Virus record (IMG/VR): IMGVR_UViG_3300035698_013060
Span: 124,001-188,000 of that record
Strand: one strand, 5' to 3'
Length of the DNA: 64,000 nt
This document shows, piece after piece, positions 13,229 to 64,000 of this stretch. Both the position numbers and the translations under genes were made by a program. A model generated the notes under the pieces. The model was not told the DNA's origin. It did not search any database and worked only from the letters and a program-made list of their open reading frames with translations. Numbering within the stretch: position 1 is the stretch's first letter; every line of letters begins with the position of its first letter.

Positions 13229-13660
13229 CTAAACGAAGAACTCACCGTGAGTCGTTCCGTCGTCTTCTTTGAAGACTTGGTATATGATCGCCTTTACGCC
13301 ATCGAGGGCTTTCTGTAAAGTTATCACTACATTAAGGACGCTGGTGGCTCTCTCGATTGTCTCAGCCTCAGCCTTCGCTACCGTTACCTTTTCGATGAGG
13401 ATATCAGGTAGATATTCTCTCAACTGAGTCGAGATCCTAAGCTCAAGCCTAGCGATGAGTCCGTCGTCTAAGATCTCGAATAGGTAAGTTCCAATACCAA
13501 CCCCCATGTCGAAATTATCGACACAAGTTCCTGGTTCCATCAGCAATAGCACTTGAGCTCTGGCTGCTATAGCCTGAAGCCCACTGTGATATGCACTTCG
13601 CCTGAAGCTGTCGATTGACAATCTCAGCTCCGGCATGACTTTCGTCCTGTCTCCGGCCAT
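13229..13660 (-). CDS. baseplate wedge protein, gp25-like
   Basis: LLLMEPG..V...DMGVGIGTYLFE...I..QL..YLP pattern. Confidence 0.75.
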   Translation of the reverse strand: MAGDRTKVMPELRLSIDSFRRSAYHSGLQAIAARAQVLLLMEPGTCVDNFDMGVGIGTYLFEILDDGLIARLELRISTQLREYLPDILIEKVTVAKAEAETIERATSVLNVVITLQKALDGVKAIIYQVFKEDDGTTHGEFFV

Positions 13661-13701
13661 GTCACTTGGCTCCTTTTGAATAATTCCCGGATCTATGTTG
13701 C

Positions 13702-13713
13702 CAATGTTCTGTT
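13702..13713 (-). promoter_or_regulatory. late promoter AACA-GAACAT-TG
   Basis: leftward member of a divergent pair. Confidence 0.65.
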
Positions 13714-13783
13714 ACCCGCATGCGAGAAAGCTCCGGAATGAGGGCCTGGTCTCAGCGAAGAAACGCCATTCCATAGAGTCAGC

Positions 13784-13795
13784 AACAACCCATTA
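13784..13795 (+). promoter_or_regulatory. late promoter AACA-ACCCAT-TA
   Basis: rightward member of a divergent pair. Confidence 0.65.
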
Positions 13796-13848
13796 ACGAT
13801 CCAGGGTGAAAGCCCATCCCGGAAAGAGATATACGGAGGCGCAAGCCC

Positions 13849-14580
13849 ATGAGTAGACCTAGAAAATGCCCACTTTGTCGTTCGAAGTTTGTGTCGCAAT
13901 CGACCCTGGAAGGGCACCTCCGAAAGCATCACGAAAAAGAGCTTGGAGGAATGAGCCCCGCTAGGTACATCTTCAATATCAGGAATAACAAGACCCGTGG
14001 TACCTGCATCATCTGTGGTAAAGAGTCAGAATTCAACGAACATACCAAGAAGTACAATAGGCTCTGTAACAGACCGATGTGCCGAGAGCGGTACATCAAG
14101 ATGTTCCGTGAGAGAATGCAACGGAAGTACGGGAAGACCCATCTTTTGGACGATCCTGATGTTCAGAAGAAGATGCTAGCTCGCAGAGGAATTTCTGGTG
14201 AGTATGGTTGGAGTGACGGAACTCCAATGACATTTACTGGACAGTATGAAGAGGAGTTTCTCAAGTACTGTGATATCTTCCTGAACCTTCCGAGTGCTGA
14301 CGTCATCGCCCCATGTCCCTTCCCTGTGGAGTACAACCACGGCGGGAAGAAGCATATCTACCTTGCTGACTTCTTCTTTCCTTCTCTTGATCTGGTCATC
14401 GAAATCAAGGCCACTGATAACAAGGGATACAGAGAGAGGGACATTGAAACTGAGAGGGTTAAAGACAAAGCCATGGTCATGAGCAATCACCATTACTTGA
14501 AAGTGGCTGACAAGAACTATGACGAGTTCTTAGAGGGTCTTATAGAAGGGCGTTGGACTAAGAAGAAATTCAAGAAGTAG
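13849..14580 (+). CDS. C2H2 zinc finger plus PD-(D/E)XK nuclease (TnsA-N / T4 gp4 head-completion-like)
   Basis: CPLC..F.....L..H...H; CIIC..C..C; YLADFF...VIEIK. Confidence 0.8.
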   Translation: MSRPRKCPLCRSKFVSQSTLEGHLRKHHEKELGGMSPARYIFNIRNNKTRGTCIICGKESEFNEHTKKYNRLCNRPMCRERYIKMFRERMQRKYGKTHLLDDPDVQKKMLARRGISGEYGWSDGTPMTFTGQYEEEFLKYCDIFLNLPSADVIAPCPFPVEYNHGGKKHIYLADFFFPSLDLVIEIKATDNKGYRERDIETERVKDKAMVMSNHHYLKVADKNYDEFLEGLIEGRWTKKKFKK

Positions 14581-57051: not shown

Positions 57052-57522
57052 TTACAGGTCGACGTCGATCGGAGTCAAGGTCCTATCAGATACGTCAGTA
57101 GGAGTTTTTCGGCTAACCTCGATCTCTTCTCTAGCCTTATTCACTGATCTCAAGAAGTTACCAACGAACCTAGGAGGTACCACTTTGATAGTACCAACAA
57201 CGAGTTCTGTTGGCCTGAACATGTTGTTGCCCCTAAGAACCATGTACCATAGGTCAGGTGTACCATAAAGAGCCTCAGAGACAGATTCAGGTCTGTATTG
57301 GAGTGTCTCATCCACCTCAAAATCGTCCATAAAAGCAAAGAGTGTCCGCATCTCTTCATGAAGAATACCGTGGGGTTCGCTCATTACGAAAAGCCCCTTG
57401 AAGAAGATCTTCATTGAAGTATTATTCAACGCCAAAGTATTGTCTTTGGAGTGGTCGACACTATCAGCGATGTCGGTGAATCGCCCCGAGTTAAATCTCG
57501 GGTTACTAGGTATATCTGCCAT
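57052..57522 (-). CDS. baseplate wedge protein, gp53/LysM-like
   Basis: YRPE.VS..LYGTPDLWY.VL..N. Confidence 0.8.
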   Translation of the reverse strand: MADIPSNPRFNSGRFTDIADSVDHSKDNTLALNNTSMKIFFKGLFVMSEPHGILHEEMRTLFAFMDDFEVDETLQYRPESVSEALYGTPDLWYMVLRGNNMFRPTELVVGTIKVVPPRFVGNFLRSVNKAREEIEVSRKTPTDVSDRTLTPIDVDL

Positions 57523-57525
57523 TCA

Positions 57526-58119
57526 TCACCTCTTCAGGTATTCCTTGACATGAGACTCCATTTGATGGTGGTCCCAGTAGCGGCTCTCCTCAAGGATAAA
57601 CCGCCTCAGTTGATTCTTATTCTCCAAAGCTTTCTCAGCAGCATTTGGAGCTAAGGCATCATCAAAGAACCTCACTCGGTTCACTGCCATACCATATTCT
57701 CTCATCATCGGAGTTATCAAGAAATTGGCAATTCCTTGGAGCATCCTCCTATCAGGAACACCCTCCCTAAAGTCATCATTCAAGACGATCAGTATGTCGT
57801 CCTTTCTACCATGCGGGATAGCTCCAGTGGCAGCTAGTTCATAGAGAAACCAAGAGACTTGGCTCCTTCCTATCCCGGAAAAGAAAACATAATCATCTTC
57901 AAGAAACTCAACGTAAAAATGGCAAGGAGGTTGACTAGCTTGAAGGTCTTCGTAGAAGTACCGTTGGTACTTGCCCCACGAATATCTATAGGAACTCCGG
58001 AGCATCCTAGGCTCCCAAACTGTTCCTCTGACCATGAGGTTGTGGAGCGGGACCAGAAGAATCCCAGTAGGCTCTCTGACCCGCTTCCACTTCTTGTCGT
58101 TGAGTATCGTGTTTCTCAC
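57526..58119 (-). CDS. amidase_2-like fold protein (likely non-catalytic)
   Basis: PPCHFYV and I.I.L..DF....P pattern; Zn ligands incomplete. Confidence 0.45.
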   Translation of the reverse strand: MRNTILNDKKWKRVREPTGILLVPLHNLMVRGTVWEPRMLRSSYRYSWGKYQRYFYEDLQASQPPCHFYVEFLEDDYVFFSGIGRSQVSWFLYELAATGAIPHGRKDDILIVLNDDFREGVPDRRMLQGIANFLITPMMREYGMAVNRVRFFDDALAPNAAEKALENKNQLRRFILEESRYWDHHQMESHVKEYLKR

Positions 58120-58120
58120 G

Positions 58121-58672
58121 TTATCCCTTGATGGACTGGTAGAACTGTTCCTTCATGGCAGCCACTTCGGCCTTGCGCTTCGGATCCTTGGTCGCTTTCT
58201 CGAGGTCATCCAAAGCTCTTTCTGCTTTCTTGACCTGCTTCGTGGCGTCCTTGCTGGCGAAGAAAGCTGCAGTCCCTACTCCAACGAGCGCGATCATGTT
58301 CAAGGTCAGACCGTAAATGGAGTAGAAGAAAGCGAGAACGAGAGCAGCTTGGAGAGCACCGATGGTAGCCAGAATGGCGACCATGATATATACTCCAACC
58401 GGAACGAGAAGCAAAGCGATTGTCGCCTTTTGAACTCCATCAGCTGTCTTATTGGCCTTCTTAGCCTTCGACATAAAGTCGTAGACCTTCGCTCCGAGGA
58501 CGTCGATGGATTCTTCGGTGAGAACTCCATTCTCGACAATGAGCGAACCCTTTTCAAAGGGCTCCAACTCAGCATCTTCCATAAGAGTTCTACCCTCTTC
58601 TGATTCGAAGAAGACCACACACTCTTCAATGGACAGATTGGCTTCACCGGCAGTTCCTTGGTAAAACAGCAT
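58121..58672 (-). CDS. head/ejection protein with MLFY leader, acidic propeptide and hydrophobic helices
   Basis: AGGAG SD; SIEE/LME/IVE/LTEE sites; roughly 60-aa hydrophobic segment. Confidence 0.65.
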   Translation of the reverse strand: MLFYQGTAGEANLSIEECVVFFESEEGRTLMEDAELEPFEKGSLIVENGVLTEESIDVLGAKVYDFMSKAKKANKTADGVQKATIALLLVPVGVYIMVAILATIGALQAALVLAFFYSIYGLTLNMIALVGVGTAAFFASKDATKQVKKAERALDDLEKATKDPKRKAEVAAMKEQFYQSIKG

Positions 58673-58693
58673 CTCGACATCTCCTGATTTTCG

Positions 58694-60289
58694 TTACACC
58701 CACTCGTCGCAATACTCTACGAGAGTACTTGTGTAGTTCACCTTCTGATTCAGTCTGTCAGCTAAGGCATCAAGCATGTCTGCCTCCATATCGGGAAGGT
58801 CAGCATTTGCCATAGATTCCAGTGGGACTCTAGTGCCGATCTGCGACACATTATCCTCTCGAAGGCGGTTGATGTTCACTAATCTACTGTTTAGCTCCAG
58901 GAAACGCTGCCTGCTCATGAGGACGTCGCCGTTAGCATCATACCCATCGTACTTGTCGTACTCTGTTCCAGGCAAATCTGGAAGATTCATAAGGGTCTTA
59001 CCGAGAGTAAGCGAGCTTACTAAGGTATACCCTGGATCAGAGTCTGGTACCACATTGACTACGGAGAAGTAGACGTATTCCCAAAAACGAGAACCGTCAT
59101 CTTCGTTCGACGGATCTCTGACAGGAAGATCTCTACTATCAGCTGTAATATGATCAATATCCAGTTGTCCGATGAAATTAGGATGGATCATGTTGTTGGT
59201 CAAAATGACGTTGGTTGGATAGCTAACAGTAGCAGCAGCAGGTAAGACCAGATTACCGACGTTAGTCTCCACGATTTGCATAGCGTAGCTAGCTTCAGCT
59301 GCCGGGAGCTCTGGATCTAGAACGGGATAGAAGAAACCTCCATCATTAAGGATGAGTCCCATATGTGAAGGATCATCAGCAATCATGACAACGTTGTGTC
59401 TACGCAGCATGACATTGGTGATAACAGCGTCGTACCACGAGTCACCACCCCATGGTGGTCCTATCGGATCTGGATTACCGGGCTGGTCTGGTTCGTCGAT
59501 GATAGAGTCAGAAATACAATCCGTTATGGCTATCCATATCTCGTCCCAGTATCGGACCATTTCTCTGACATAGTTGATATCTTTATCTGCTTTCGCAACC
59601 TCTCCGGAAGCTAGTATCTTGTCATACATGTACTCTGTGGGAGTCTGTGCTCCTGGGGTCGGTTCACTGATACTATCCAACGGGTTGCCGTCATCATCAT
59701 GAATCATATTTTGTATACTCTGGTCCTGGGATTTAGACAGGTGGTCCACTGCATATCCAGTAATGAGAGATGTGATGTCGAAAGCGGAAGCGAACCCGTT
59801 CTGTACCATCAGCGAGTGATATAGTGTGTACAAGTCGGCGAAATCCTGGGTTGAGAGCCGGGTGATCCTGGACATGTAGTCCTGCTCCCAGTCGAGGTAG
59901 AGTTCGTCGTTCTCAGGGTCATCCGGATACTTGGGCGTAATAATCCACGCCTTAAAGGCTATTATTCTATCCCCCACTAATTCTTCGTAGTTCCTTTCAA
60001 TGATGACATCTTCGTCATTCTTCTGAAGTTGATCATCTTGCGTTCTGATATACCTATCAAGGAATACCAGTTCGTTCTGTACCCAAGCCCAGTGATTTCT
60101 TGGGACCGTTACATCAGGATCTGTCTCTCCGTCAGCTTCTTCCGTAGGAGAGAACTGTCCATCCAGAGACCAGAGCTTCATCTTGAGGTAGTTAGCATCT
60201 TCTTCGTCAGAGTAGTCCCTCACGAGGAGTTGTTCCTCGATCCATTGTCTGGGATTGATGAAGTTGTCATTGTCTCTGATATTGGCCAT
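58694..60289 (-). CDS. acidic virion structural protein
   Basis: GGAG SD; heads a baseplate-gene run. Confidence 0.65.
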   Translation of the reverse strand: MANIRDNDNFINPRQWIEEQLLVRDYSDEEDANYLKMKLWSLDGQFSPTEEADGETDPDVTVPRNHWAWVQNELVFLDRYIRTQDDQLQKNDEDVIIERNYEELVGDRIIAFKAWIITPKYPDDPENDELYLDWEQDYMSRITRLSTQDFADLYTLYHSLMVQNGFASAFDITSLITGYAVDHLSKSQDQSIQNMIHDDDGNPLDSISEPTPGAQTPTEYMYDKILASGEVAKADKDINYVREMVRYWDEIWIAITDCISDSIIDEPDQPGNPDPIGPPWGGDSWYDAVITNVMLRRHNVVMIADDPSHMGLILNDGGFFYPVLDPELPAAEASYAMQIVETNVGNLVLPAAATVSYPTNVILTNNMIHPNFIGQLDIDHITADSRDLPVRDPSNEDDGSRFWEYVYFSVVNVVPDSDPGYTLVSSLTLGKTLMNLPDLPGTEYDKYDGYDANGDVLMSRQRFLELNSRLVNINRLREDNVSQIGTRVPLESMANADLPDMEADMLDALADRLNQKVNYTSTLVEYCDEWV

Positions 60290-60318
60290 AAGAGTTCTCC
60301 GTAAATAACAGCTTTTTC

Positions 60319-60330
60319 ATCACATATTAA
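60319..60330 (+). promoter_or_regulatory. early promoter ATCACATATTAA
   Basis: CACATATTA identical to the 17498-17506 site. Confidence 0.6.
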
Positions 60331-60370
60331 AGCGATGTATGATACGAAATCCACAACAAGGAGAATAGAA

Positions 60371-60604
60371 ATGTTCACAGGATCACTCGCAAATGTCACT
60401 AATGATTTGGTCCATGTCAACGACGTGGCCGAAGCAGCCGTGGCTCAGAGAAGAGACATGCTGCGCGGTACTCTGCTCGAGGGAGATCCCCGGATTGAGC
60501 AGATGAATCAGAATGCTCTCGCCGGGATTCGCAAGGCTACTGAGAAGATCTTCATGGCTGAAGCTTCAGCCAGGACACCCAGGGATCGGAAATCTACCTG
60601 GTAG
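60371..60604 (+). CDS. early hypothetical protein
   Basis: AAGGAG SD before ATG 60371. Confidence 0.7.
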   Translation: MFTGSLANVTNDLVHVNDVAEAAVAQRRDMLRGTLLEGDPRIEQMNQNALAGIRKATEKIFMAEASARTPRDRKSTW

Positions 60605-60705
60605 AAGATTAGGGGGAGCTCTGGCTCCCGGGGAGGCTTTGCCTTCTTCCCGTGAATACATCCTAAATGAGACTGATATTAGTGATCTATCAAGGGAGGT
60701 GTTCC

Positions 60706-60870
60706 ATGAAGATACAGACTCCAGGCACGATGACCCTCGTAGTGATTGCTATCCTGTGGATTGATGTTCTGATCATCTGGAAGCTTGGCTTCTGGGCGTT
60801 CTGTGGCATCACCCTCGCTGGCAACACGTTCAATCACTGGCTCAGAACCAGGAAAGGAAGTGGATCATGA
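60706..60870 (+). CDS. small membrane protein
   Basis: GGGAGG SD; hydrophobic. Confidence 0.6.
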   Translation: MKIQTPGTMTLVVIAILWIDVLIIWKLGFWAFCGITLAGNTFNHWLRTRKGSGS

Positions 60871-61055
60871 TGGACTTGGGAGAAGCCGCCGAGGCTATAA
60901 ACCGGGAGACGGAGAGGATGACGAAGGAATTCGCCATCAAACGTTCCGCAAGGAAGATCAACGTTGAACGAGCCTGCAAGCTGATGTGTCAGCTCACAGC
61001 TGGTGAGATCAACGGTGAAGACTTCCAAACCAGGCTGAATGAGATCTCAGCCTGA
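60867..61055 (+). CDS. hypothetical protein (62 aa)
   Basis: ATGA overlap. Confidence 0.65.
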   Translation: MMDLGEAAEAINRETERMTKEFAIKRSARKINVERACKLMCQLTAGEINGEDFQTRLNEISA

Positions 61056-61095
61056 TGAAAATGAACTTGAAAAGGAGGCGTCTAATGCTTCTTCT

Positions 61096-61395
61096 CTATC
61101 CTCCAGTAATTACAGTTCCAGCTCCTGTTACTACGTTGCCGATGAAACACCCTACGAAGAGATCTCCTATTCGACAAACGTTACTCCCTTCAGCTATGAC
61201 TGTAGAAGAGCCGGTGACCATGATCCCGACATGCCCACAGAATCCGAGCATAACATCTCCGATCCTAGATGTAGGCATCCCCTCAGCAATCACTGTTCCA
61301 GCTCCAGTTACGAGCACACCGACCATCCCTATGCAGCTCTTATGACAGCAGCAGACGCCGACACCGAGATCGGATATTCTTGCCGTTGGTGGCAT
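61096..61395 (-). CDS. PAAR-repeat spike-tip protein (gp5.4-like)
   Basis: three repeats PTARISD / PTSRIGD / VCRIGD with TG..TV..EG; Cys/His metal site. Confidence 0.9.
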   Translation of the reverse strand: MPPTARISDLGVGVCCCHKSCIGMVGVLVTGAGTVIAEGMPTSRIGDVMLGFCGHVGIMVTGSSTVIAEGSNVCRIGDLFVGCFIGNVVTGAGTVITGG

Positions 61396-62555
61396 CAGTT
61401 ATCCTCTTTTTCTTCAGTGTTTACAACGCAGAACCTTATCTCCCCCTTCTTCCTTCCACTTTTCTCGAAATTCAGTATTCTATTGACTACTGTTTCATAA
61501 CCCCAAGTTCCAATCCCAGTCTCTCTACTGACCTTCCCGATCTCATCTAGGGTTCTCTTAGCAGCGTCTAGAGTTTTTGGAGTCCATCCGTCACCACACG
61601 GATCCAACCTTCCGAGACCGTTTTCTTCGAGCCACGGACCTCTGTAAGGTGCAAAGCACACTGACTTCATTCCGTTCTTAGCACCCCACCTCATAAGGTC
61701 TGGCCCATCCGTCAACGTCTCGGTTGTGATAAGACTTCCAAGAAAGATCCCGTGATTGGGGTCCCTGCGAAAGATTTCTTCCAGATTCCCCTTGACTATA
61801 CTAAGATCTTTCAGTCTGTGAGTCTTGTAATGTTCAGGGTCTACGGTATCAAGACTCACGGATATCCTTGTTAGAGGACCATTCCTCACCCATTTCTCCC
61901 ACTTCTCTGGAGTCATCCCGATCCCATTAGTAATCGTCATTATCTCGGTCCCCGGATTGGGAAGATCCAAGACTTTTTTGATATAGGAGTCAGGATGAGC
62001 AAAGAGGTCCCCACCCATGAACTGTGTGTACCTCACATTCTTGAATACCGGTTTCAGCTTCTCAAAGTTCTTATCGTTCAGTTGATTCTTGACGTTAGGA
62101 ATGTAAGTGGACCAACAGAAAGGACACGCTGTGTTACACTTGCGTCCTATGAAAAGGAAAACCATGAGAGGCTGTGTATCGATCTTTGATTTTCCAGAGA
62201 GAATACTCTTCTCTATCTCATCGATCTCTGGACAATTTTTAAATCTCTTACGAAGTAAGTCCATTTGCTCTTTGACCGTTTGTCCGTTACCTCTACATAT
62301 CGGACAAGACATCTCAACAGGACAGGCTTTCTTGTATCCAACTGCCAACATCTTCTCACGAAACTTGACGAACCCTTCACAATTCCATTGTACTTCACCG
62401 CTGTACGGACCACCCTCTAGGTATTCGTGCTTAACTAGATCAGGAACGTAACAGCAGGGACTGACTCCCCATCCACCAATTCCAAGATATGTCCATGGGT
62501 CAACACAGATGTCTCTCCTCAAACTGAGATCTTCAGTACTTGCTTCGTTAATCAT
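61395..62555 (-). CDS. radical SAM enzyme with N-terminal SPASM/twitch-like domain
   Basis: CNTACPFC, MGGD, TNG, ISVSLD; N-terminal CVDPW...VSPCC...WN...FR...C....CPIC. Confidence 0.9.
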   Translation of the reverse strand: MINEASTEDLSLRRDICVDPWTYLGIGGWGVSPCCYVPDLVKHEYLEGGPYSGEVQWNCEGFVKFREKMLAVGYKKACPVEMSCPICRGNGQTVKEQMDLLRKRFKNCPEIDEIEKSILSGKSKIDTQPLMVFLFIGRKCNTACPFCWSTYIPNVKNQLNDKNFEKLKPVFKNVRYTQFMGGDLFAHPDSYIKKVLDLPNPGTEIMTITNGIGMTPEKWEKWVRNGPLTRISVSLDTVDPEHYKTHRLKDLSIVKGNLEEIFRRDPNHGIFLGSLITTETLTDGPDLMRWGAKNGMKSVCFAPYRGPWLEENGLGRLDPCGDGWTPKTLDAAKRTLDEIGKVSRETGIGTWGYETVVNRILNFEKSGRKKGEIRFCVVNTEEKEDN

Positions 62556-62917
62556 TTTATTTCATGACTTTTATCGTAGTCTTCTTTGCACACTGGAAGC
62601 ATGTCTACAGTCTTCCCAGCGAATTTATGAGTACAGTCGCTAAGAAACCTGACCTTCCCATTCTCGATGAAGCAGTGACACCTCATCAACTCTTCTCCCC
62701 TGGATTGGCTCAAGAGAGAAGGACTGAGTGTCGGCTTATCAAGAGACTCATTCCAAAACCAACACGGTCCTTTGCTCTCTTTCTTTCCAGTATGGAAAGG
62801 TACCACGCACAATCCGACCCATCCCTGAAGACGGATCCTGATATGAGATGCCTCTGGAATAGGGCACTCTACATATGCATGGTCTAGCAGTTTTACAGGC
62901 TGTGCTAATTTGATCAT
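62552..62917 (-). CDS. DUF6527-like protein
   Basis: W.WN...DKPTLSPS.L...CH.FI.NG.V.FLSDCTH..AG.TVD. Confidence 0.75.
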   Translation of the reverse strand: MIKLAQPVKLLDHAYVECPIPEASHIRIRLQGWVGLCVVPFHTGKKESKGPCWFWNESLDKPTLSPSLLSQSRGEELMRCHCFIENGKVRFLSDCTHKFAGKTVDMLPVCKEDYDKSHEIK

Positions 62918-62926
62918 GGTTTTCTC

Positions 62927-63292
62927 TTAGACGGGTAATATCGGAGAAAAGTAAACTCCTTCAGAGTAGAGTTTCTCTCTAATCTCCTCAGAGACGGCTT
63001 GAAGTTCTTTACAAACCTTGTCAGCTTCCCCAAGATTCATGCCTGCGGTAAAGGTCATCGTAGGATGCCCATGTTGAGTAAACTGTATCAACCTGATCTT
63101 GAAGGTTGGCTTGCCTAAAAACCTCTTACCGGAGCAATCATAGACTGGATGATAGTAGAACGCCTCTTTGTAGACCTGTTGGTGAGGATCCCGCGTCTCT
63201 CTCATGAGTTTTTCCATGGCTTCTCTTCCACTCAAAGCCTTCGGGAAAACTCGACGAAAGAGAGCTATCATCTTTTTCAACTTACTCATCAT
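62927..63292 (-). CDS. hypothetical protein (121 aa)
   Basis: GGGGG SD; directly after the spike gene. Confidence 0.7.
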   Translation of the reverse strand: MMSKLKKMIALFRRVFPKALSGREAMEKLMRETRDPHQQVYKEAFYYHPVYDCSGKRFLGKPTFKIRLIQFTQHGHPTMTFTAGMNLGEADKVCKELQAVSEEIREKLYSEGVYFSPILPV

Positions 63293-63297
63293 TCCCC

Positions 63298-64000
63298 CTA
63301 GCTGTTCAAGTAGATCATTCCAGCCGTCTGTCTGATAGTGGCTCCAGCCTGTACGTCCACAGCAGAGCCAGCCTTGACATTGACCTGACTTCCAGATTCT
63401 ACGTTAACGGTAGATCCAGTCTTAATGTTGATCACAGTACCCTGGTTAAGCTCGATCAGTGATCCGCTGTACGTGTAGATATGCACGAGATCCGCCACAT
63501 CATCCATGAGCATGTAGTGGCCTTTGACTGTCCTGACGTGGATCTTCTCGTATCCAGCGTTGTCATCCATCGTAATGAAATGACCGGCGCTAGTCTCGAG
63601 CTTCACAAAGGTCCCGTGGTTCACTCCGTCTTCGTCGTTGGCATCCAACGGGTTATCATCGCCCACAGCCGACGACTTGTCGACCAACTTCAACTGATGC
63701 CCGCTCTGAGTATTCAAGGTCACGACTGAAGAGTCCGCATTGAACTCCAACTTGAGCCTATGACCGTTGGCGAACTTCAGGATGAAAGTGTTTCTATCGT
63801 TGTTAGTGTCAGCATACAGAACGTTCCCATTCTGCCACTCTCTTAGGACGTGGATGTTGACCTTCGTCTGCATGGTGTCCCTATTAGCGAACGATTCTAC
63901 GTTAGCCATCGGAGTCACCTCACCATACAGTGTGGGTGAGAAGGGAAGGAAGTAGCACTTCTGCGGATCTCCGTCCTCGAATAGGACGAACACCGTAGAT
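63298..64000 (-). CDS. baseplate central spike (gp5/VgrG-like), 5' end outside the window
   Basis: end of OB fold V.F..GDP; repeated T..GH.I.MDD; 8-residue beta-helix repeats. Confidence 0.8.
   Translation of the reverse strand, partial: STVFVLFEDGDPQKCYFLPFSPTLYGEVTPMANVESFANRDTMQTKVNIHVLREWQNGNVLYADTNNDRNTFILKFANGHRLKLEFNADSSVVTLNTQSGHQLKLVDKSSAVGDDNPLDANDEDGVNHGTFVKLETSAGHFITMDDNAGYEKIHVRTVKGHYMLMDDVADLVHIYTYSGSLIELNQGTVINIKTGSTVNVESGSQVNVKAGSAVDVQAGATIRQTAGMIYLNS

What the first reader, a model, noticed from the sequence alone, without database searches (positions are those of the whole stretch)
61096..63292. Radical SAM plus DUF6527-like cassette inserted between the central spike and its PAAR tip, translationally coupled
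Seen: gp5-like spike, 121-aa ORF, DUF6527-like, (ATGA overlap) radical SAM with N-terminal SPASM-like Cys cluster, (TGATG overlap) Cys-rich PAAR. Established: SPASM/twitch radical SAM enzymes often modify peptides or proteins. DUF6527 is recalled from bacterial ubiquitin-like conjugation (Bub-type) operons, and the related Bil defence conjugates a Ubl onto the phage central tail fibre/spike. Inference: a late co-expressed module that chemically modifies or protects the spike or tip, possibly counter-defence against Ubl conjugation. It may instead be cargo at an insertion hotspot, as between T4 genes 5 and 5.4.
Basis: partly seen in the sequence, partly recalled or inferred. Interest (0 to 1): 0.7.

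Follow-up and report, generated by a model that had tools for sequence, protein, structure and literature searches.

The report
Cargo genes between spike and PAAR
In a 241-kb salt-lake jumbo phage, three accessory genes (an orphan ORF, a small DUF6527 peptidase and a radical SAM enzyme) do sit between the tail-spike gene and its PAAR tip gene. Related phages fill this slot with different genes, and the radical SAM enzyme's conserved partners elsewhere are sugar-transfer and methylation enzymes, not the spike.

Summary
On the minus strand lie spike (OB-fold plus beta-helix), a 121-aa orphan, DUF6527, a radical SAM with an N-terminal twitch-like Cys domain, and PAAR. The ATGA and TGATG overlaps are as described. 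Contigs from three further salt-lake samples bridge the junctions.

The main interpretation, a module that modifies or protects the spike or tip, is not supported.
- Five related phage loci keep the backbone helicase | spike ... p197-p156. Each has different content after the spike: PAAR directly abutting, a 233-aa ORF then PAAR, a 65-aa ORF, or a roughly 800-aa ORF. None has the rSAM or DUF6527.
- In 8 of 8 informative loci, the rSAM's relatives are fused or adjacent to glycosyltransferase and/or Methyltransf_24/TylF genes in phage contigs. None is near PAAR, spike or DUF6527.
- The conserved GT-A-like partner domain lies 6.4 kb away in this genome, next to a tail-fibre gene.
- DUF6527 homologues occur in 277 phage records in unrelated contexts.

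DUF6527 keeps the BubE catalytic Ser and His. A stand-alone anti-Ubl deconjugase role therefore remains an untested possibility.

Best reading: lineage-specific cargo in a variable slot. The rSAM probably belongs to a dispersed glycan-tailoring set. Interest is modest.

The parts
63298..64000 (-). Central spike gene. It runs off the window; the full 376-aa gene ends at window-equivalent 64428 (G000 187298-188428). It has an OB-fold (gpV/VgrG-type) N-terminal part and a beta-helix-like repeat C-terminus, with no lysozyme domain.
   Evidence: PF04717 scores 26.4 bits, above the 23.8 cut-off. NF033848 VgrG_rel E = 8e-5. Relatives at 28-50% identity keep the same divergent helicase neighbour.
62927..63292 (-). 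orf121a, a 121-aa orphan ORF and first gene of the inserted cassette.
   Evidence: No hit in Pfam, PHROGs or NCBIfam. Atlas hits are under 0.9 and its model has pLDDT 0.53. No homologue in any related locus.
62552..62917 (-). DUF6527 (BubE-type) small Zn-ribbon Ser/His peptidase homologue, 121 aa. S67 and H81 are the predicted catalytic dyad. The CPGC knuckle is degenerate (only C18 kept) and there is a 16-aa lineage-specific insertion.
   Evidence: PF20137 scores 33.7 bits, above 23.6; phrog_3362 E = 1e-21. Alignment A2 has invariant S67, C80, H81, D94, C95 and H97. Motifs were compared with BubE sequences printed in the paper's supplement. It is the only copy in the genome.
61395..62555 (-). 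Radical SAM enzyme, 386 aa. It has an N-terminal twitch/SPASM-like auxiliary-cluster domain (C17, C34, C35, C78, C84) and a core CX3CX2C motif (C140, C144, C147). Its start overlaps the DUF6527 stop (ATGA) and its stop overlaps the PAAR start (TGATG).
   Evidence: PF04055 scores 52.8 bits. NF033640 scores 44.4 bits, below its cut-off of 170. Family alignment A1. The AF2 model has pLDDT 90.2.
61096..61395 (-). PAAR tip protein, 99 aa, last gene of the operon. It carries the Cys/His pattern CCCHxxC...CGH...GC.
   Evidence: PF05488 scores 23.6 bits (cut-off 27). phrog_281 E = 6e-9 and NF033420 E = 7e-5. It is 53% identical to the L026 PAAR and 41% to the L032 PAAR, and L026 keeps the same Cys pattern. 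It is the only PAAR in the genome.
61021..61062 (-). Hairpin just after the PAAR stop, between convergent genes. It is a possible operon end.
   Evidence: One search shows a stem of about 9 bp. The whole-region z-score is only -1.41, so the evidence is weak. The consensus terminator scan found nothing here.
58121..60289 (-). Second variable slot. It holds a 531-aa gene (58694-60289) and a 183-aa gene (58121-58672), lying between PAAR and the conserved p197 gene. Both are absent from related loci.
   Evidence: No family hits for the 531-aa protein. In L026 the PAAR is followed directly by the p197 homologue.
57052..58119 (-). Conserved backbone genes p197 (57526-58119) and p156 (57052-57522). 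They mark the downstream edge of the variable region.
   Evidence: Homologues lie downstream of the spike in L026, L027, L032 and L043 at 33-45% identity for p197.

Best explanation
The three genes between spike and PAAR are lineage-specific cargo in a variable slot of a conserved late tail-tip operon. They are not a conserved spike-maturation module.

The backbone in this phage group is a divergent Dda/PIF1-like helicase, then spike, then optionally PAAR, then p197 and p156. In one relative the spike and PAAR genes abut with a 4-nt overlap.

In this phage, orf121a, DUF6527 and the rSAM were inserted between spike and PAAR and packed tightly. They are therefore most likely co-transcribed and co-translated late with spike and PAAR (inferred).

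The two recognisable cargo genes appear functionally independent of each other.

1. The rSAM belongs to an uncharacterised, mostly viral family with an N-terminal twitch-type auxiliary Fe-S domain. Its conserved partners are a GT-A-like glycosyltransferase domain and Methyltransf_24/TylF-type methyltransferases. I infer that it performs a radical (5'-deoxyadenosyl) tailoring step on a sugar or glycan. That glycan would be built by the GT-A/methyltransferase protein encoded 6.4 kb away beside the tail-fibre gene, and possibly by the Methyltransf_24 gene elsewhere in the genome. Because these cassettes lie in tail modules, the most likely acceptor is a virion (tail) protein or a host envelope glycan.

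2. DUF6527 is a stand-alone BubE-type Ser/His peptidase of a kind scattered through many phages.

Shown: the gene order, the overlaps, family membership, the variability of the slot, and the GT/MT linkage of the rSAM family. Inferred: late co-expression, the chemistry and the acceptor.
For: Slot variability:
- L032: spike 36% identical, then PAAR overlapping by 4 nt, then a 314-aa ORF, then p197.
- L026: spike 49% identical, then an unrelated 233-aa ORF, then PAAR (53% identical), then p197.
- L027: spike 43% identical, then a 65-aa ORF, then p197 and p156.
- L043: spike 37% identical, then a roughly 800-aa ORF, then p197 and p156.
- None of these loci has an rSAM or DUF6527.
- In phages BCSR5 and X1 the nearest named PAAR homologues sit directly after the hub gene, inside baseplate clusters.
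- Cassette GC is 0.45, against 0.51 for both spike and PAAR. That is the 6th percentile of genome windows.

rSAM linkage:
- The nearest relative, P0002 (39% identical), is a fusion of a GT-A-like domain and the rSAM.
- In L011, L012, L016, L022, L023 and L024 the adjacent or overlapping gene is a large GT and/or TylF/Methyltransf_24 protein.
- In L015 and L016 the rSAM is near or fused to Methyltransf_24.
- These partner proteins match residues 350-640 of this genome's own 883-aa protein.
- The Atlas places that region with GT2/Glyco_transf_7C nucleotide-sugar transferases. Feature score is 0.94, and structural TM is 0.74-0.76 to viral GT clusters.
- Alignment A3 has an invariant DxD motif.
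- tblastn and an HMM search find no PAAR, spike, orf121a or DUF6527 within 8-9 kb of any rSAM relative.
- 26 of 28 family members have N_Twi_rSAM as their shared best NCBIfam model.
- Radical SAM and glycosyltransferase cassettes in the hypervariable tail-fibre region of aquatic myophages have been described (PMC7029224).

DUF6527:
- 277 phage records carry homologues.
- Their contexts include positions after topoisomerase II, after the portal gene, after the endolysin, between tail-tube and baseplate genes, and alone among hypothetical genes.
Against: - In this genome the rSAM is not next to a GT or methyltransferase. It is translationally coupled to DUF6527 and PAAR, which would fit a local function.
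- The association is drawn from relatives only 25-39% identical.
- The GT-A call rests on weak HMM hits (Glycos_transf_2 E = 0.013; beta-1,4-GalT E = 3.6) plus language-model and structural similarity. My own AF2 model of that domain was poor, with pLDDT 47.
- Contigs L026, L027 and L043 are short (6-9 kb). Those phages could carry the rSAM or DUF6527 elsewhere in their genomes.
- Being cargo does not exclude acting on the spike or PAAR.
- No expression data exist. No RNA run holds this sequence.
Confidence: 0.6

Rival explanations
1. orf121a, DUF6527 and the rSAM form one functional module that is co-expressed with the spike and PAAR. It chemically modifies or protects them, for example against host Ubl conjugation.
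For: Tight packing and start/stop overlaps within one operon ending at PAAR. DUF6527 keeps the BubE Ser/His dyad. [quoted passage not shown]
Against: There is no co-occurrence of the three genes with each other, or with spike or PAAR, in any other locus examined. That covers 8 informative rSAM loci, 9 DUF6527 contexts and 5 spike-relative loci. The PAAR Cys/His pattern is the same in L026, whose spike-PAAR interval holds no rSAM. The phage encodes no E1, and the Bil target is a siphophage central fibre, not a myophage spike.
Confidence: 0.1
2. DUF6527 alone is a phage counter-defence enzyme. It would be a viral BubE-like deconjugase that cleaves host Ubl (Bub- or Bil-type) off phage or host proteins. 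Its place in the spike operon would only give it late expression, and the rSAM would be unrelated.
For: BubE removes BubA-target conjugates in cells, and this needs S92 and H102. Both residues align with the invariant S67 and H81 of the phage proteins. The family is widespread in phages that lack any E1, E2 or Ubl. Its scattered positions resemble those of mobile accessory genes, which fits an accessory or anti-defence gene.
Against: No experiment exists on any phage DUF6527. BubE's in-vitro activity is very weak and specific for its own Ubl. In the window protein the Zn knuckle is degenerate, with only C18 of CPGC kept. Bub operons have not yet been shown to defend against phage. The host of this salt-lake phage, and whether it has Bub or Bil, is unknown.
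Confidence: 0.2
3. The rSAM is a protein or peptide maturase for the Cys-rich PAAR, or for orf121a as a precursor. It would install thioether or other cross-links, as sactipeptide and ranthipeptide SPASM/twitch enzymes do.
For: The auxiliary-cluster domain and the core resemble SkfB, CteB, SuiB and AlbA in fold searches. The rSAM is translationally coupled to a 99-aa Cys-rich protein.
Against: The fold matches are generic to the rSAM core, with TM of about 0.45. There is no RRE/PqqD-like domain hit. The family's partners elsewhere are GT and methyltransferase genes, not small Cys-rich ORFs. The PAAR Cys pattern is conserved in L026, whose spike-PAAR interval holds no rSAM, so it looks like the usual metal site of PAAR cones.
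Confidence: 0.05

Closest known systems
Small accessory ORFs between T4 gene 5 (spike) and gene 5.4 (PAAR tip): 5.1 and 5.3. This comparison rests on my own knowledge of the T4 map, not on a tool result.
   Same: Accessory genes of no known structural role sit between the spike gene and its PAAR tip gene, within a late operon.
   Different: Here the inserted genes are larger and enzymatic (a radical SAM and a DUF6527 peptidase). The operon is detached from the baseplate wedge cluster: the gp25-like gene lies about 50 kb away. The spike has no lysozyme domain.
Hypervariable tail-fibre region cassettes of pelagimyophages and cyanomyophages, which carry glycosyltransferases and radical SAM genes (PMC7029224)
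   Same: Aquatic myophages. GT and radical SAM cassettes come and go near tail genes between close relatives, and their function is unknown. That paper suggests host surface glycan modification.
   Different: In this genome the rSAM is separated from its GT partner and lies inside the spike-PAAR operon. I did not test whether those published rSAM genes belong to the same N-twitch family.
BubE (DUF6527) of bacterial Bub/6E ubiquitination-like operons (bioRxiv 10.1101/2024.11.21.623953)
   Same: The Pfam family is the same, scoring above the gathering threshold. The Ser (LxPS) and His (C..H-aromatic-I/V..G) dyad positions are conserved. Both are small Cys-containing beta-rich proteins.
   Different: No E1, E2 or Ubl partners are present. 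There is no hydrophobic extension. Phage-type proteins carry an extra invariant FLSDCxH C-terminal motif. The window protein has lost part of the Zn knuckle.
NCBIfam NF033640 N_Twi_rSAM (twitch domain-containing radical SAM protein, auxiliary domain N-terminal)
   Same: The domain order is the same: a Cys-rich auxiliary domain before the CX3CX2C core. It is the best-scoring curated model for 26 of 28 family members.
   Different: The score is far below the family cut-off (44 bits against 170). The viral family is therefore a distant sister group, not a member. No function is attached to NF033640 in the data I could reach.
JAB/MPN DUB-like domains in siphophage tail-assembly proteins, which the discoverers of Bil speculated to be anti-Bil (bioRxiv 10.1101/2023.09.04.556158)
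   Same: The idea is the same: a phage-encoded deconjugating peptidase expressed with tail-tip genes.
   Different: The fold and catalytic type differ (metalloprotease versus Ser/His). Both ideas are untested.

Membership tests
Radical SAM superfamily (PF04055) | CX3CX2C motif for the SAM-binding 4Fe-4S cluster, and a Pfam score above the gathering threshold | tested here: met
   C140/C144/C147 are conserved in alignment A1. PF04055 scores 52.8 bits against a cut-off of 29.5. The AF2 model has pLDDT 90 and matches the rSAM core.
SPASM/twitch subfamily (canonical, C-terminal auxiliary domain) | A Cys-rich auxiliary Fe-S domain located C-terminal to the barrel (PF13186) | tested here: not met
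   The conserved Cys cluster (C17, C34, C35, C78, C84) is N-terminal. PF13186 is not hit in the window protein at E <= 0.1. It is hit N-terminal to the core in the relatives P0048 and P0049.
NF033640 N_Twi_rSAM | Score at or above the curated cut-off of 170 bits | tested here: not met
   The score is 44.4 bits, covering residues 15-299 of the protein and positions 3-305 of 398 in the model. The best E-value among 28 relatives is 2e-16.
RiPP radical SAM maturases (sactipeptide or ranthipeptide type) | An RRE/PqqD-like leader-binding domain and an adjacent precursor peptide, conserved across relatives | tested here: not met
   No RRE/PqqD hit. The relatives' neighbours are GT and methyltransferase genes.
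DUF6527 / BubE | PF20137 above the gathering threshold | tested here: met
   33.7 bits against a cut-off of 23.6, and 34.2 bits in the genome scan.
DUF6527 / BubE | Catalytic Ser-His dyad (S92/H102 in Citrobacter BubE, S65/H76 in E. coli BubE) | tested here: met
   S67 (in LSPS-L) and H81 (in C-H-C-F-I-x-x-G) are invariant in A2. They match the LHPS and C-R-S-H-F/Y-W-I-x-x-G motifs of the BubE sequences printed in the supplement. The motif comparison was made by eye, not by a program.
DUF6527 / BubE | C4 zinc site (a CxCxC knuckle plus one Cys before the His) | tested here: inconclusive
   Phage homologues have CPGC, C80 and C95. The window protein keeps C18, C80 and C95 but has P21 in place of the second knuckle Cys, plus a 16-aa insertion containing C37.
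Bub operon (system membership) | Neighbouring E1, E2 and Ubl genes | tested here: not met
   The neighbours are orf121a, the rSAM, the spike and PAAR. There is no ThiF-family E1 anywhere in the 241-kb genome.
PAAR tip protein | PAAR repeats forming a cone, encoded with a spike gene, with family HMM support | tested here: met
   Three PAAR-like motifs are present: PTARISD, PTSRIGD and VCRIGD. phrog_281 E = 6e-9. It is 53% identical to the L026 protein that Pfam calls PAAR. Its own PF05488 score is 23.6 bits, just under the cut-off of 27.
gpV/VgrG/gp5-type central spike | An OB-fold injector domain followed by a beta-helix | tested here: met
   PF04717 scores 26.4 bits against 23.8. VgrG_rel matches residues 133-245. 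The beta-helix is inferred from the repetitive C-terminus. There is no lysozyme domain, so it is not of T4 gp5 architecture.
GT-A glycosyltransferase (partner domain, own 883-aa protein residues 350-640) | A DxD motif and the nucleotide-diphospho-sugar transferase fold | tested here: inconclusive
   A3 has an invariant D120-x-D122. Atlas feature score is 0.94 to GT2/GT7C clusters and TM is 0.74-0.76 to viral GT clusters. Pfam gives only weak hits (E = 0.013), and the AF2 model is poor.

The most novel reading that the evidence does not exclude
Phage DUF6527 proteins, found in at least 277 phage records and here placed inside the spike-PAAR operon, may be viral deconjugases. They would strip host ubiquitin-like tags (Bub- or Bil-type) from tail-tip or other virion proteins during assembly. 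That would be a widespread and so far unrecognised anti-defence family. In this phage it would be co-expressed with a glycan-tailoring radical SAM that also helps mask virion proteins.
Probability: 0.15. Interest if true: 0.75.

Novelty: new member of a known kind. Interest (0 to 1): 0.35.

Why it matters
If the best reading holds, the locus illustrates two general points.

First, the spike-PAAR junction of this jumbo-phage group is a recurrent landing site for cargo genes. That makes it a useful place to look for accessory and anti-defence genes.

Second, there is a coherent, uncharacterised, mainly viral radical SAM family with an N-terminal twitch domain. It is physically fused or adjacent to GT-A and TylF-like methyltransferase genes. 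This points to radical chemistry in phage-encoded glycan decoration, for which no enzyme has been characterised in the sources I could reach.

Separately, BubE-type Ser/His peptidases are common in phages that lack any Ubl machinery. This gives a directly testable candidate for counter-defence against bacterial ubiquitin-like conjugation.

Tried and rejected
- Single-protein scans of IMG/VR for the rSAM, DUF6527 and the spike found no relatives.
- tblastn of the rSAM against GenBank phages found nothing.
- The word-based protein search for the rSAM found only itself.
- Fold searches of the good rSAM model gave only generic radical SAM core matches, with TM of about 0.45. Hits included SkfB, BlsE, viperin, DesII, PqqE and MoaA, so no substrate assignment is possible.
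- The AF2 model of the GT-like domain, built from a 5-sequence alignment, was poor (pLDDT 47). I did not use it for fold search.
- The predicted complex of rSAM plus PAAR returned 'no answer' (score 0.01). It counts neither for nor against binding.
- orf121a: no family, and the Atlas leads were too weak to use.
- The genome of relative L032 could not be searched because the record is not held.
- No RNA sequencing run holds the region, so co-transcription could not be checked.
- Contigs from other samples showed no cassette-less joined form. Contigs drop rare variants, so this is not evidence that such a form is absent.
- The T4-type late promoter TATAAATA is absent from the genome, and consensus promoter and terminator scans were uninformative.
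- The second weak rSAM-like ORF, the own Methyltransf_24 protein and the 883-aa protein gave no NCBIfam hits.
- Literature searches for an N-terminal twitch radical SAM, and for PAAR together with radical SAM, found nothing relevant.
Full report
**What the window is.** The window is bases 124001-188000 of a 241,176-bp virus record with direct terminal repeats, estimated to be complete. Public runs that hold the region are all salt-lake metagenomes.

**Observation.** Five tightly packed ORFs lie on the minus strand. The spike gene continues 428 nt past the window end.

| Gene | Window coordinates | Length | Main evidence |
|---|---|---|---|
| Spike | 63298 to past the end | 376 aa | Phage_base_V OB domain above Pfam's cut-off; weak VgrG-related match; repetitive beta-helix-like C-terminus; no lysozyme domain |
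| orf121a | 62927-63292 | 121 aa | No family in three HMM libraries; no usable Atlas lead |
| DUF6527 | 62552-62917 | 121 aa | PF20137 at 33.7 bits, above the cut-off; phrog_3362 E = 1e-21 |
| Radical SAM | 61395-62555 | 386 aa | PF04055 at 52.8 bits |
| PAAR | 61096-61395 | 99 aa | Three PAAR-like motifs; PHROG 'PAAR' E = 6e-9; Pfam score just under its cut-off; 53% identical to a Pfam-called PAAR in a relative |

The ATGA and TGATG overlaps are read directly from the sequence. The other two junctions are gaps of 5 and 9 nt. A modest hairpin follows the PAAR stop, where convergent plus-strand ORFs begin.

The arrangement is reproduced in an identical 107.8-kb contig. Contigs from three other samples bridge the junctions at 99% identity or more, with one SNP and no indels.

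**The radical SAM enzyme.** It has no close relatives.
- An exhaustive HMMER search of 1.8 billion cluster representatives gave 495 hits at E <= 1e-3, but only 8 at E <= 1e-30.
- An alignment of 28 full-length relatives shows an N-terminal domain. C17, C34, C78 and C84 are invariant, and P20, W21 and C35 are nearly so. The CX3CX2C motif follows at C140/C144/C147.
- The best curated model is NF033640, 'twitch domain-containing radical SAM protein'. The score is 44 bits against a cut-off of 170. That model is the shared best hit for 26 of the 28 relatives.
- Some relatives give Pfam SPASM hits N-terminal to the core.

The protein is a distant sister of N_Twi_rSAM, not a member.

The AlphaFold2 model is confident (pLDDT 90.2). 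It matches solved or Swiss-Prot structures only through the generic core, at TM of about 0.45. Peptide maturases, sugar-modifying enzymes, viperin and MoaA score alike. Structure therefore does not assign a substrate.

**Context of the rSAM family.** I looked at nine distinct relatives, eight of them on informative contigs.

| Locus | What lies with the rSAM |
|---|---|
| L009 (P0002, 39% identical) | A 688-aa fusion: 330-aa N-terminal domain plus the rSAM; follows a tail-fibre-like gene |
| L011 | A 1030-aa TylF/Methyltransf_24 protein overlaps the rSAM start |
| L012 | A 961-aa Glycos_transf_1 protein overlaps the start; a Methyltransf_24 gene overlaps the end; lies near a tail-sheath-type gene |
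| L015 | An rSAM-Methyltransf_24 protein within 1 kb |
| L016 | The rSAM is fused to Methyltransf_24 and preceded by a 557-aa protein |
| L022 | A block of GT2, GT1 and several methyltransferase genes |
| L023 | A 1029-aa TylF/Methyltransf_24 protein directly follows |
| L024 | An 899-aa Glycos_transf_2 protein overlaps the start; a terminase gene lies nearby |

- In L009, the C-terminus of the preceding tail-fibre-like gene is 48% identical to that of this genome's 1337-aa fibre protein.
- BLAST shows that the large neighbours in L009, L011, L012, L016, L022 and L023 all share one domain. That domain matches residues 350-640 of this genome's own 883-aa protein at G000 192989-195640.
- The shared domain has an invariant DxD motif.
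- The ESM Atlas places it with GT2/Glyco_transf_7C nucleotide-sugar transferases, by features (0.94, all ten best hits in one clan) and by structure (TM 0.74-0.76 to viral GT clusters).
- Direct HMM support is weak, and my own model of the domain was poor.
- In this genome the 883-aa gene lies 6.4 kb upstream of the rSAM on the same strand. It sits just after a 1337-aa protein with phage-tail-repeat and Laminin_G_3 domains.
- A Methyltransf_24 gene lies far away, at G000 13445-14080.
- tblastn with the window's spike, orf121a, DUF6527 and PAAR, and an HMM built from DUF6527 homologues, found none of these in any rSAM-relative locus.

**DUF6527.** The family is BubE of Bub (formerly 6E) operons. 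It has been shown to be a Ser/His protease with a C4 zinc site that removes BubA-target conjugates.
- BubE sequences printed in that paper's supplement let me place the catalytic Ser in the L-x-P-S motif (S67 here). The His falls in the C..H-aromatic-I/V-x-x-G motif (H81 here). I did this comparison by eye.
- Both residues are invariant among nine phage and metagenome homologues, together with a phage-specific FLSDCxH tail.
- The window protein has lost the second Cys of the CPGC knuckle and carries a 16-aa insertion.
- tblastn finds homologues in 277 GenBank phage records. Most are Ackermannviridae; others include Erwinia and Klebsiella jumbo phages, 9NA, and Pseudomonas, Rhizobium and Acinetobacter phages.
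- Their contexts are heterogeneous. They lie after the topoisomerase II genes, beside an internal head protein, alone on the opposite strand, and between tail-tube and baseplate genes next to an endonuclease. Others lie after the endolysin and after the portal gene.
- None of the nine records examined has an rSAM or a PAAR annotated beside it.
- The phage genome has no ThiF-type E1 and only one DUF6527 copy.

**The slot itself.** Spike relatives and a profile scan gave five comparable loci. All keep a divergent Dda/PIF1-type helicase upstream and homologues of p197 and p156 downstream. They differ in what lies between.

| Locus | Spike identity | Content between spike and p197 |
|---|---|---|
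| Own | 100% | orf121a, DUF6527, rSAM, PAAR, then 531-aa and 183-aa genes |
| L026 | 49% | Unrelated 233-aa ORF, then PAAR |
| L027 | 43% | 65-aa ORF only |
| L043 | 37% | One ORF of about 800 aa |
| L032 (253-kb phage) | 36% | PAAR overlapping the spike gene by 4 nt, then a 314-aa ORF |

- The closest named PAAR homologues, in Burkholderia phage BCSR5 and Xanthomonas phage X1, sit directly after the hub gene within baseplate clusters.
- The L026 PAAR keeps the same CCCHxxC...CGH...GC pattern with no rSAM in its spike-PAAR interval. The Cys-richness therefore looks intrinsic to the tip.
- The cassette has lower GC (0.45) than both flanking genes (0.51). That is the 6th percentile of genome windows. 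This is mild support for a separate history.

**Interpretation.** This is a cargo slot, analogous to the interval between T4 genes 5 and 5.4 (that analogy is from my own knowledge).

For the rSAM I commit to a role in glycan tailoring with the GT-A/methyltransferase proteins.
- The basis is the fusion and adjacency evidence from eight loci.
- The chemistry (H-atom abstraction on a sugar), the acceptor (virion tail proteins or host envelope glycans) and late co-expression are inferences.
- Radical SAM and GT cassettes in the hypervariable tail-fibre region of pelagimyophages have been described without a function (PMC7029224).

For DUF6527, an active BubE-type peptidase without Ubl machinery, widespread in phages, is a reasonable candidate for a viral deconjugase. 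The discoverers of Bil made a similar speculation for DUB domains in tail-assembly proteins. Nothing here tests the idea, and its position by the spike is not conserved.

**Limits.**
- The relatives are distant (25-50% identity), and three comparison contigs are short.
- No expression data exist.
- The predicted-complex job for rSAM plus PAAR returned no answer and is not used as evidence.
- Being cargo does not exclude a local function; only biochemistry can settle that.

**Verdict.**
- The main interpretation is not supported, and the fallback is supported.
- Novelty: new members of known kinds, namely a divergent N-twitch radical SAM and a phage BubE-type peptidase in a cargo slot.
- Interest is modest (0.35). 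There is a lower-probability but more interesting anti-Ubl reading for DUF6527.

Noticed in passing
Outside the window: G000 192989-195640 (-), L002 6990-9641: An 883-aa multidomain protein. Residues 163-237 hit a GT PHROG, residues 350-640 are GT-A-like with a DxD motif, and the C-terminus is methyltransferase-like. It lies directly after a 1337-aa tail-fibre-like gene. It is the conserved partner of the rSAM family in other phages and is reminiscent of multidomain viral GT-methyltransferase enzymes.
   Followed up: partly
window 58121-61055: A second variable slot lies between PAAR and the conserved p197 gene. It holds a 531-aa and a 183-aa minus-strand gene with no family hits, plus small convergent plus-strand ORFs (60335-60604 and 60867-61055). 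All are absent from related loci.
   Followed up: partly
L032 1097-2848: The 253-kb relative carries parts of a diversity-generating retroelement, a bAvd-like gene and an RVT_1 reverse transcriptase, about 8 kb from its spike operon.
   Followed up: no
L010 1-1418; P0036, P0047, P0048: Relatives of the rSAM occur as tandem paralogues (L010). They also occur as long proteins with two radical SAM domains, or with SPASM plus rSAM repeats.
   Followed up: no
G000 222092-222982 (+), L007 1288-2178: A second, weak radical-SAM-like ORF in the same genome. PF04055 scores 26.4 bits, below the cut-off, and there is no NCBIfam hit.
   Followed up: partly
GenBank phage records (e.g. Erwinia phages Huxley and Machina, Klebsiella phage FBKp24): Phage DUF6527 genes are often annotated 'putative ammonia monooxygenase' or 'anaerobic dehydrogenase'. 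Given the BubE work, these labels look like misannotations.
   Followed up: no
L028 2830-5222 (Acinetobacter phage nACB2): Here the DUF6527 gene lies between 'tail tube' and 'baseplate' genes, next to an endonuclease gene. This is the one DUF6527 context found that is close to a baseplate, and it may be linked to homing-endonuclease mobility.
   Followed up: no
window 59500-64000 in runs X1-X4: The phage is nearly clonal across four salt-lake samples. There is one SNP, at 60210, in 4.5 kb, and no indels.
   Followed up: yes
L023 135-5712: A phage-like contig carrying an rSAM relative also encodes sulfotransferases and a release-factor-like (PCRF/RF-1) protein.
   Followed up: no
window 13319-13585 (G000 137319-137585): The gp25-like baseplate wedge gene lies about 50 kb from the spike-PAAR operon. 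The tip genes are therefore detached from the baseplate cluster and sit among replication genes (Dda-like and DnaB-like helicases).
   Followed up: partly
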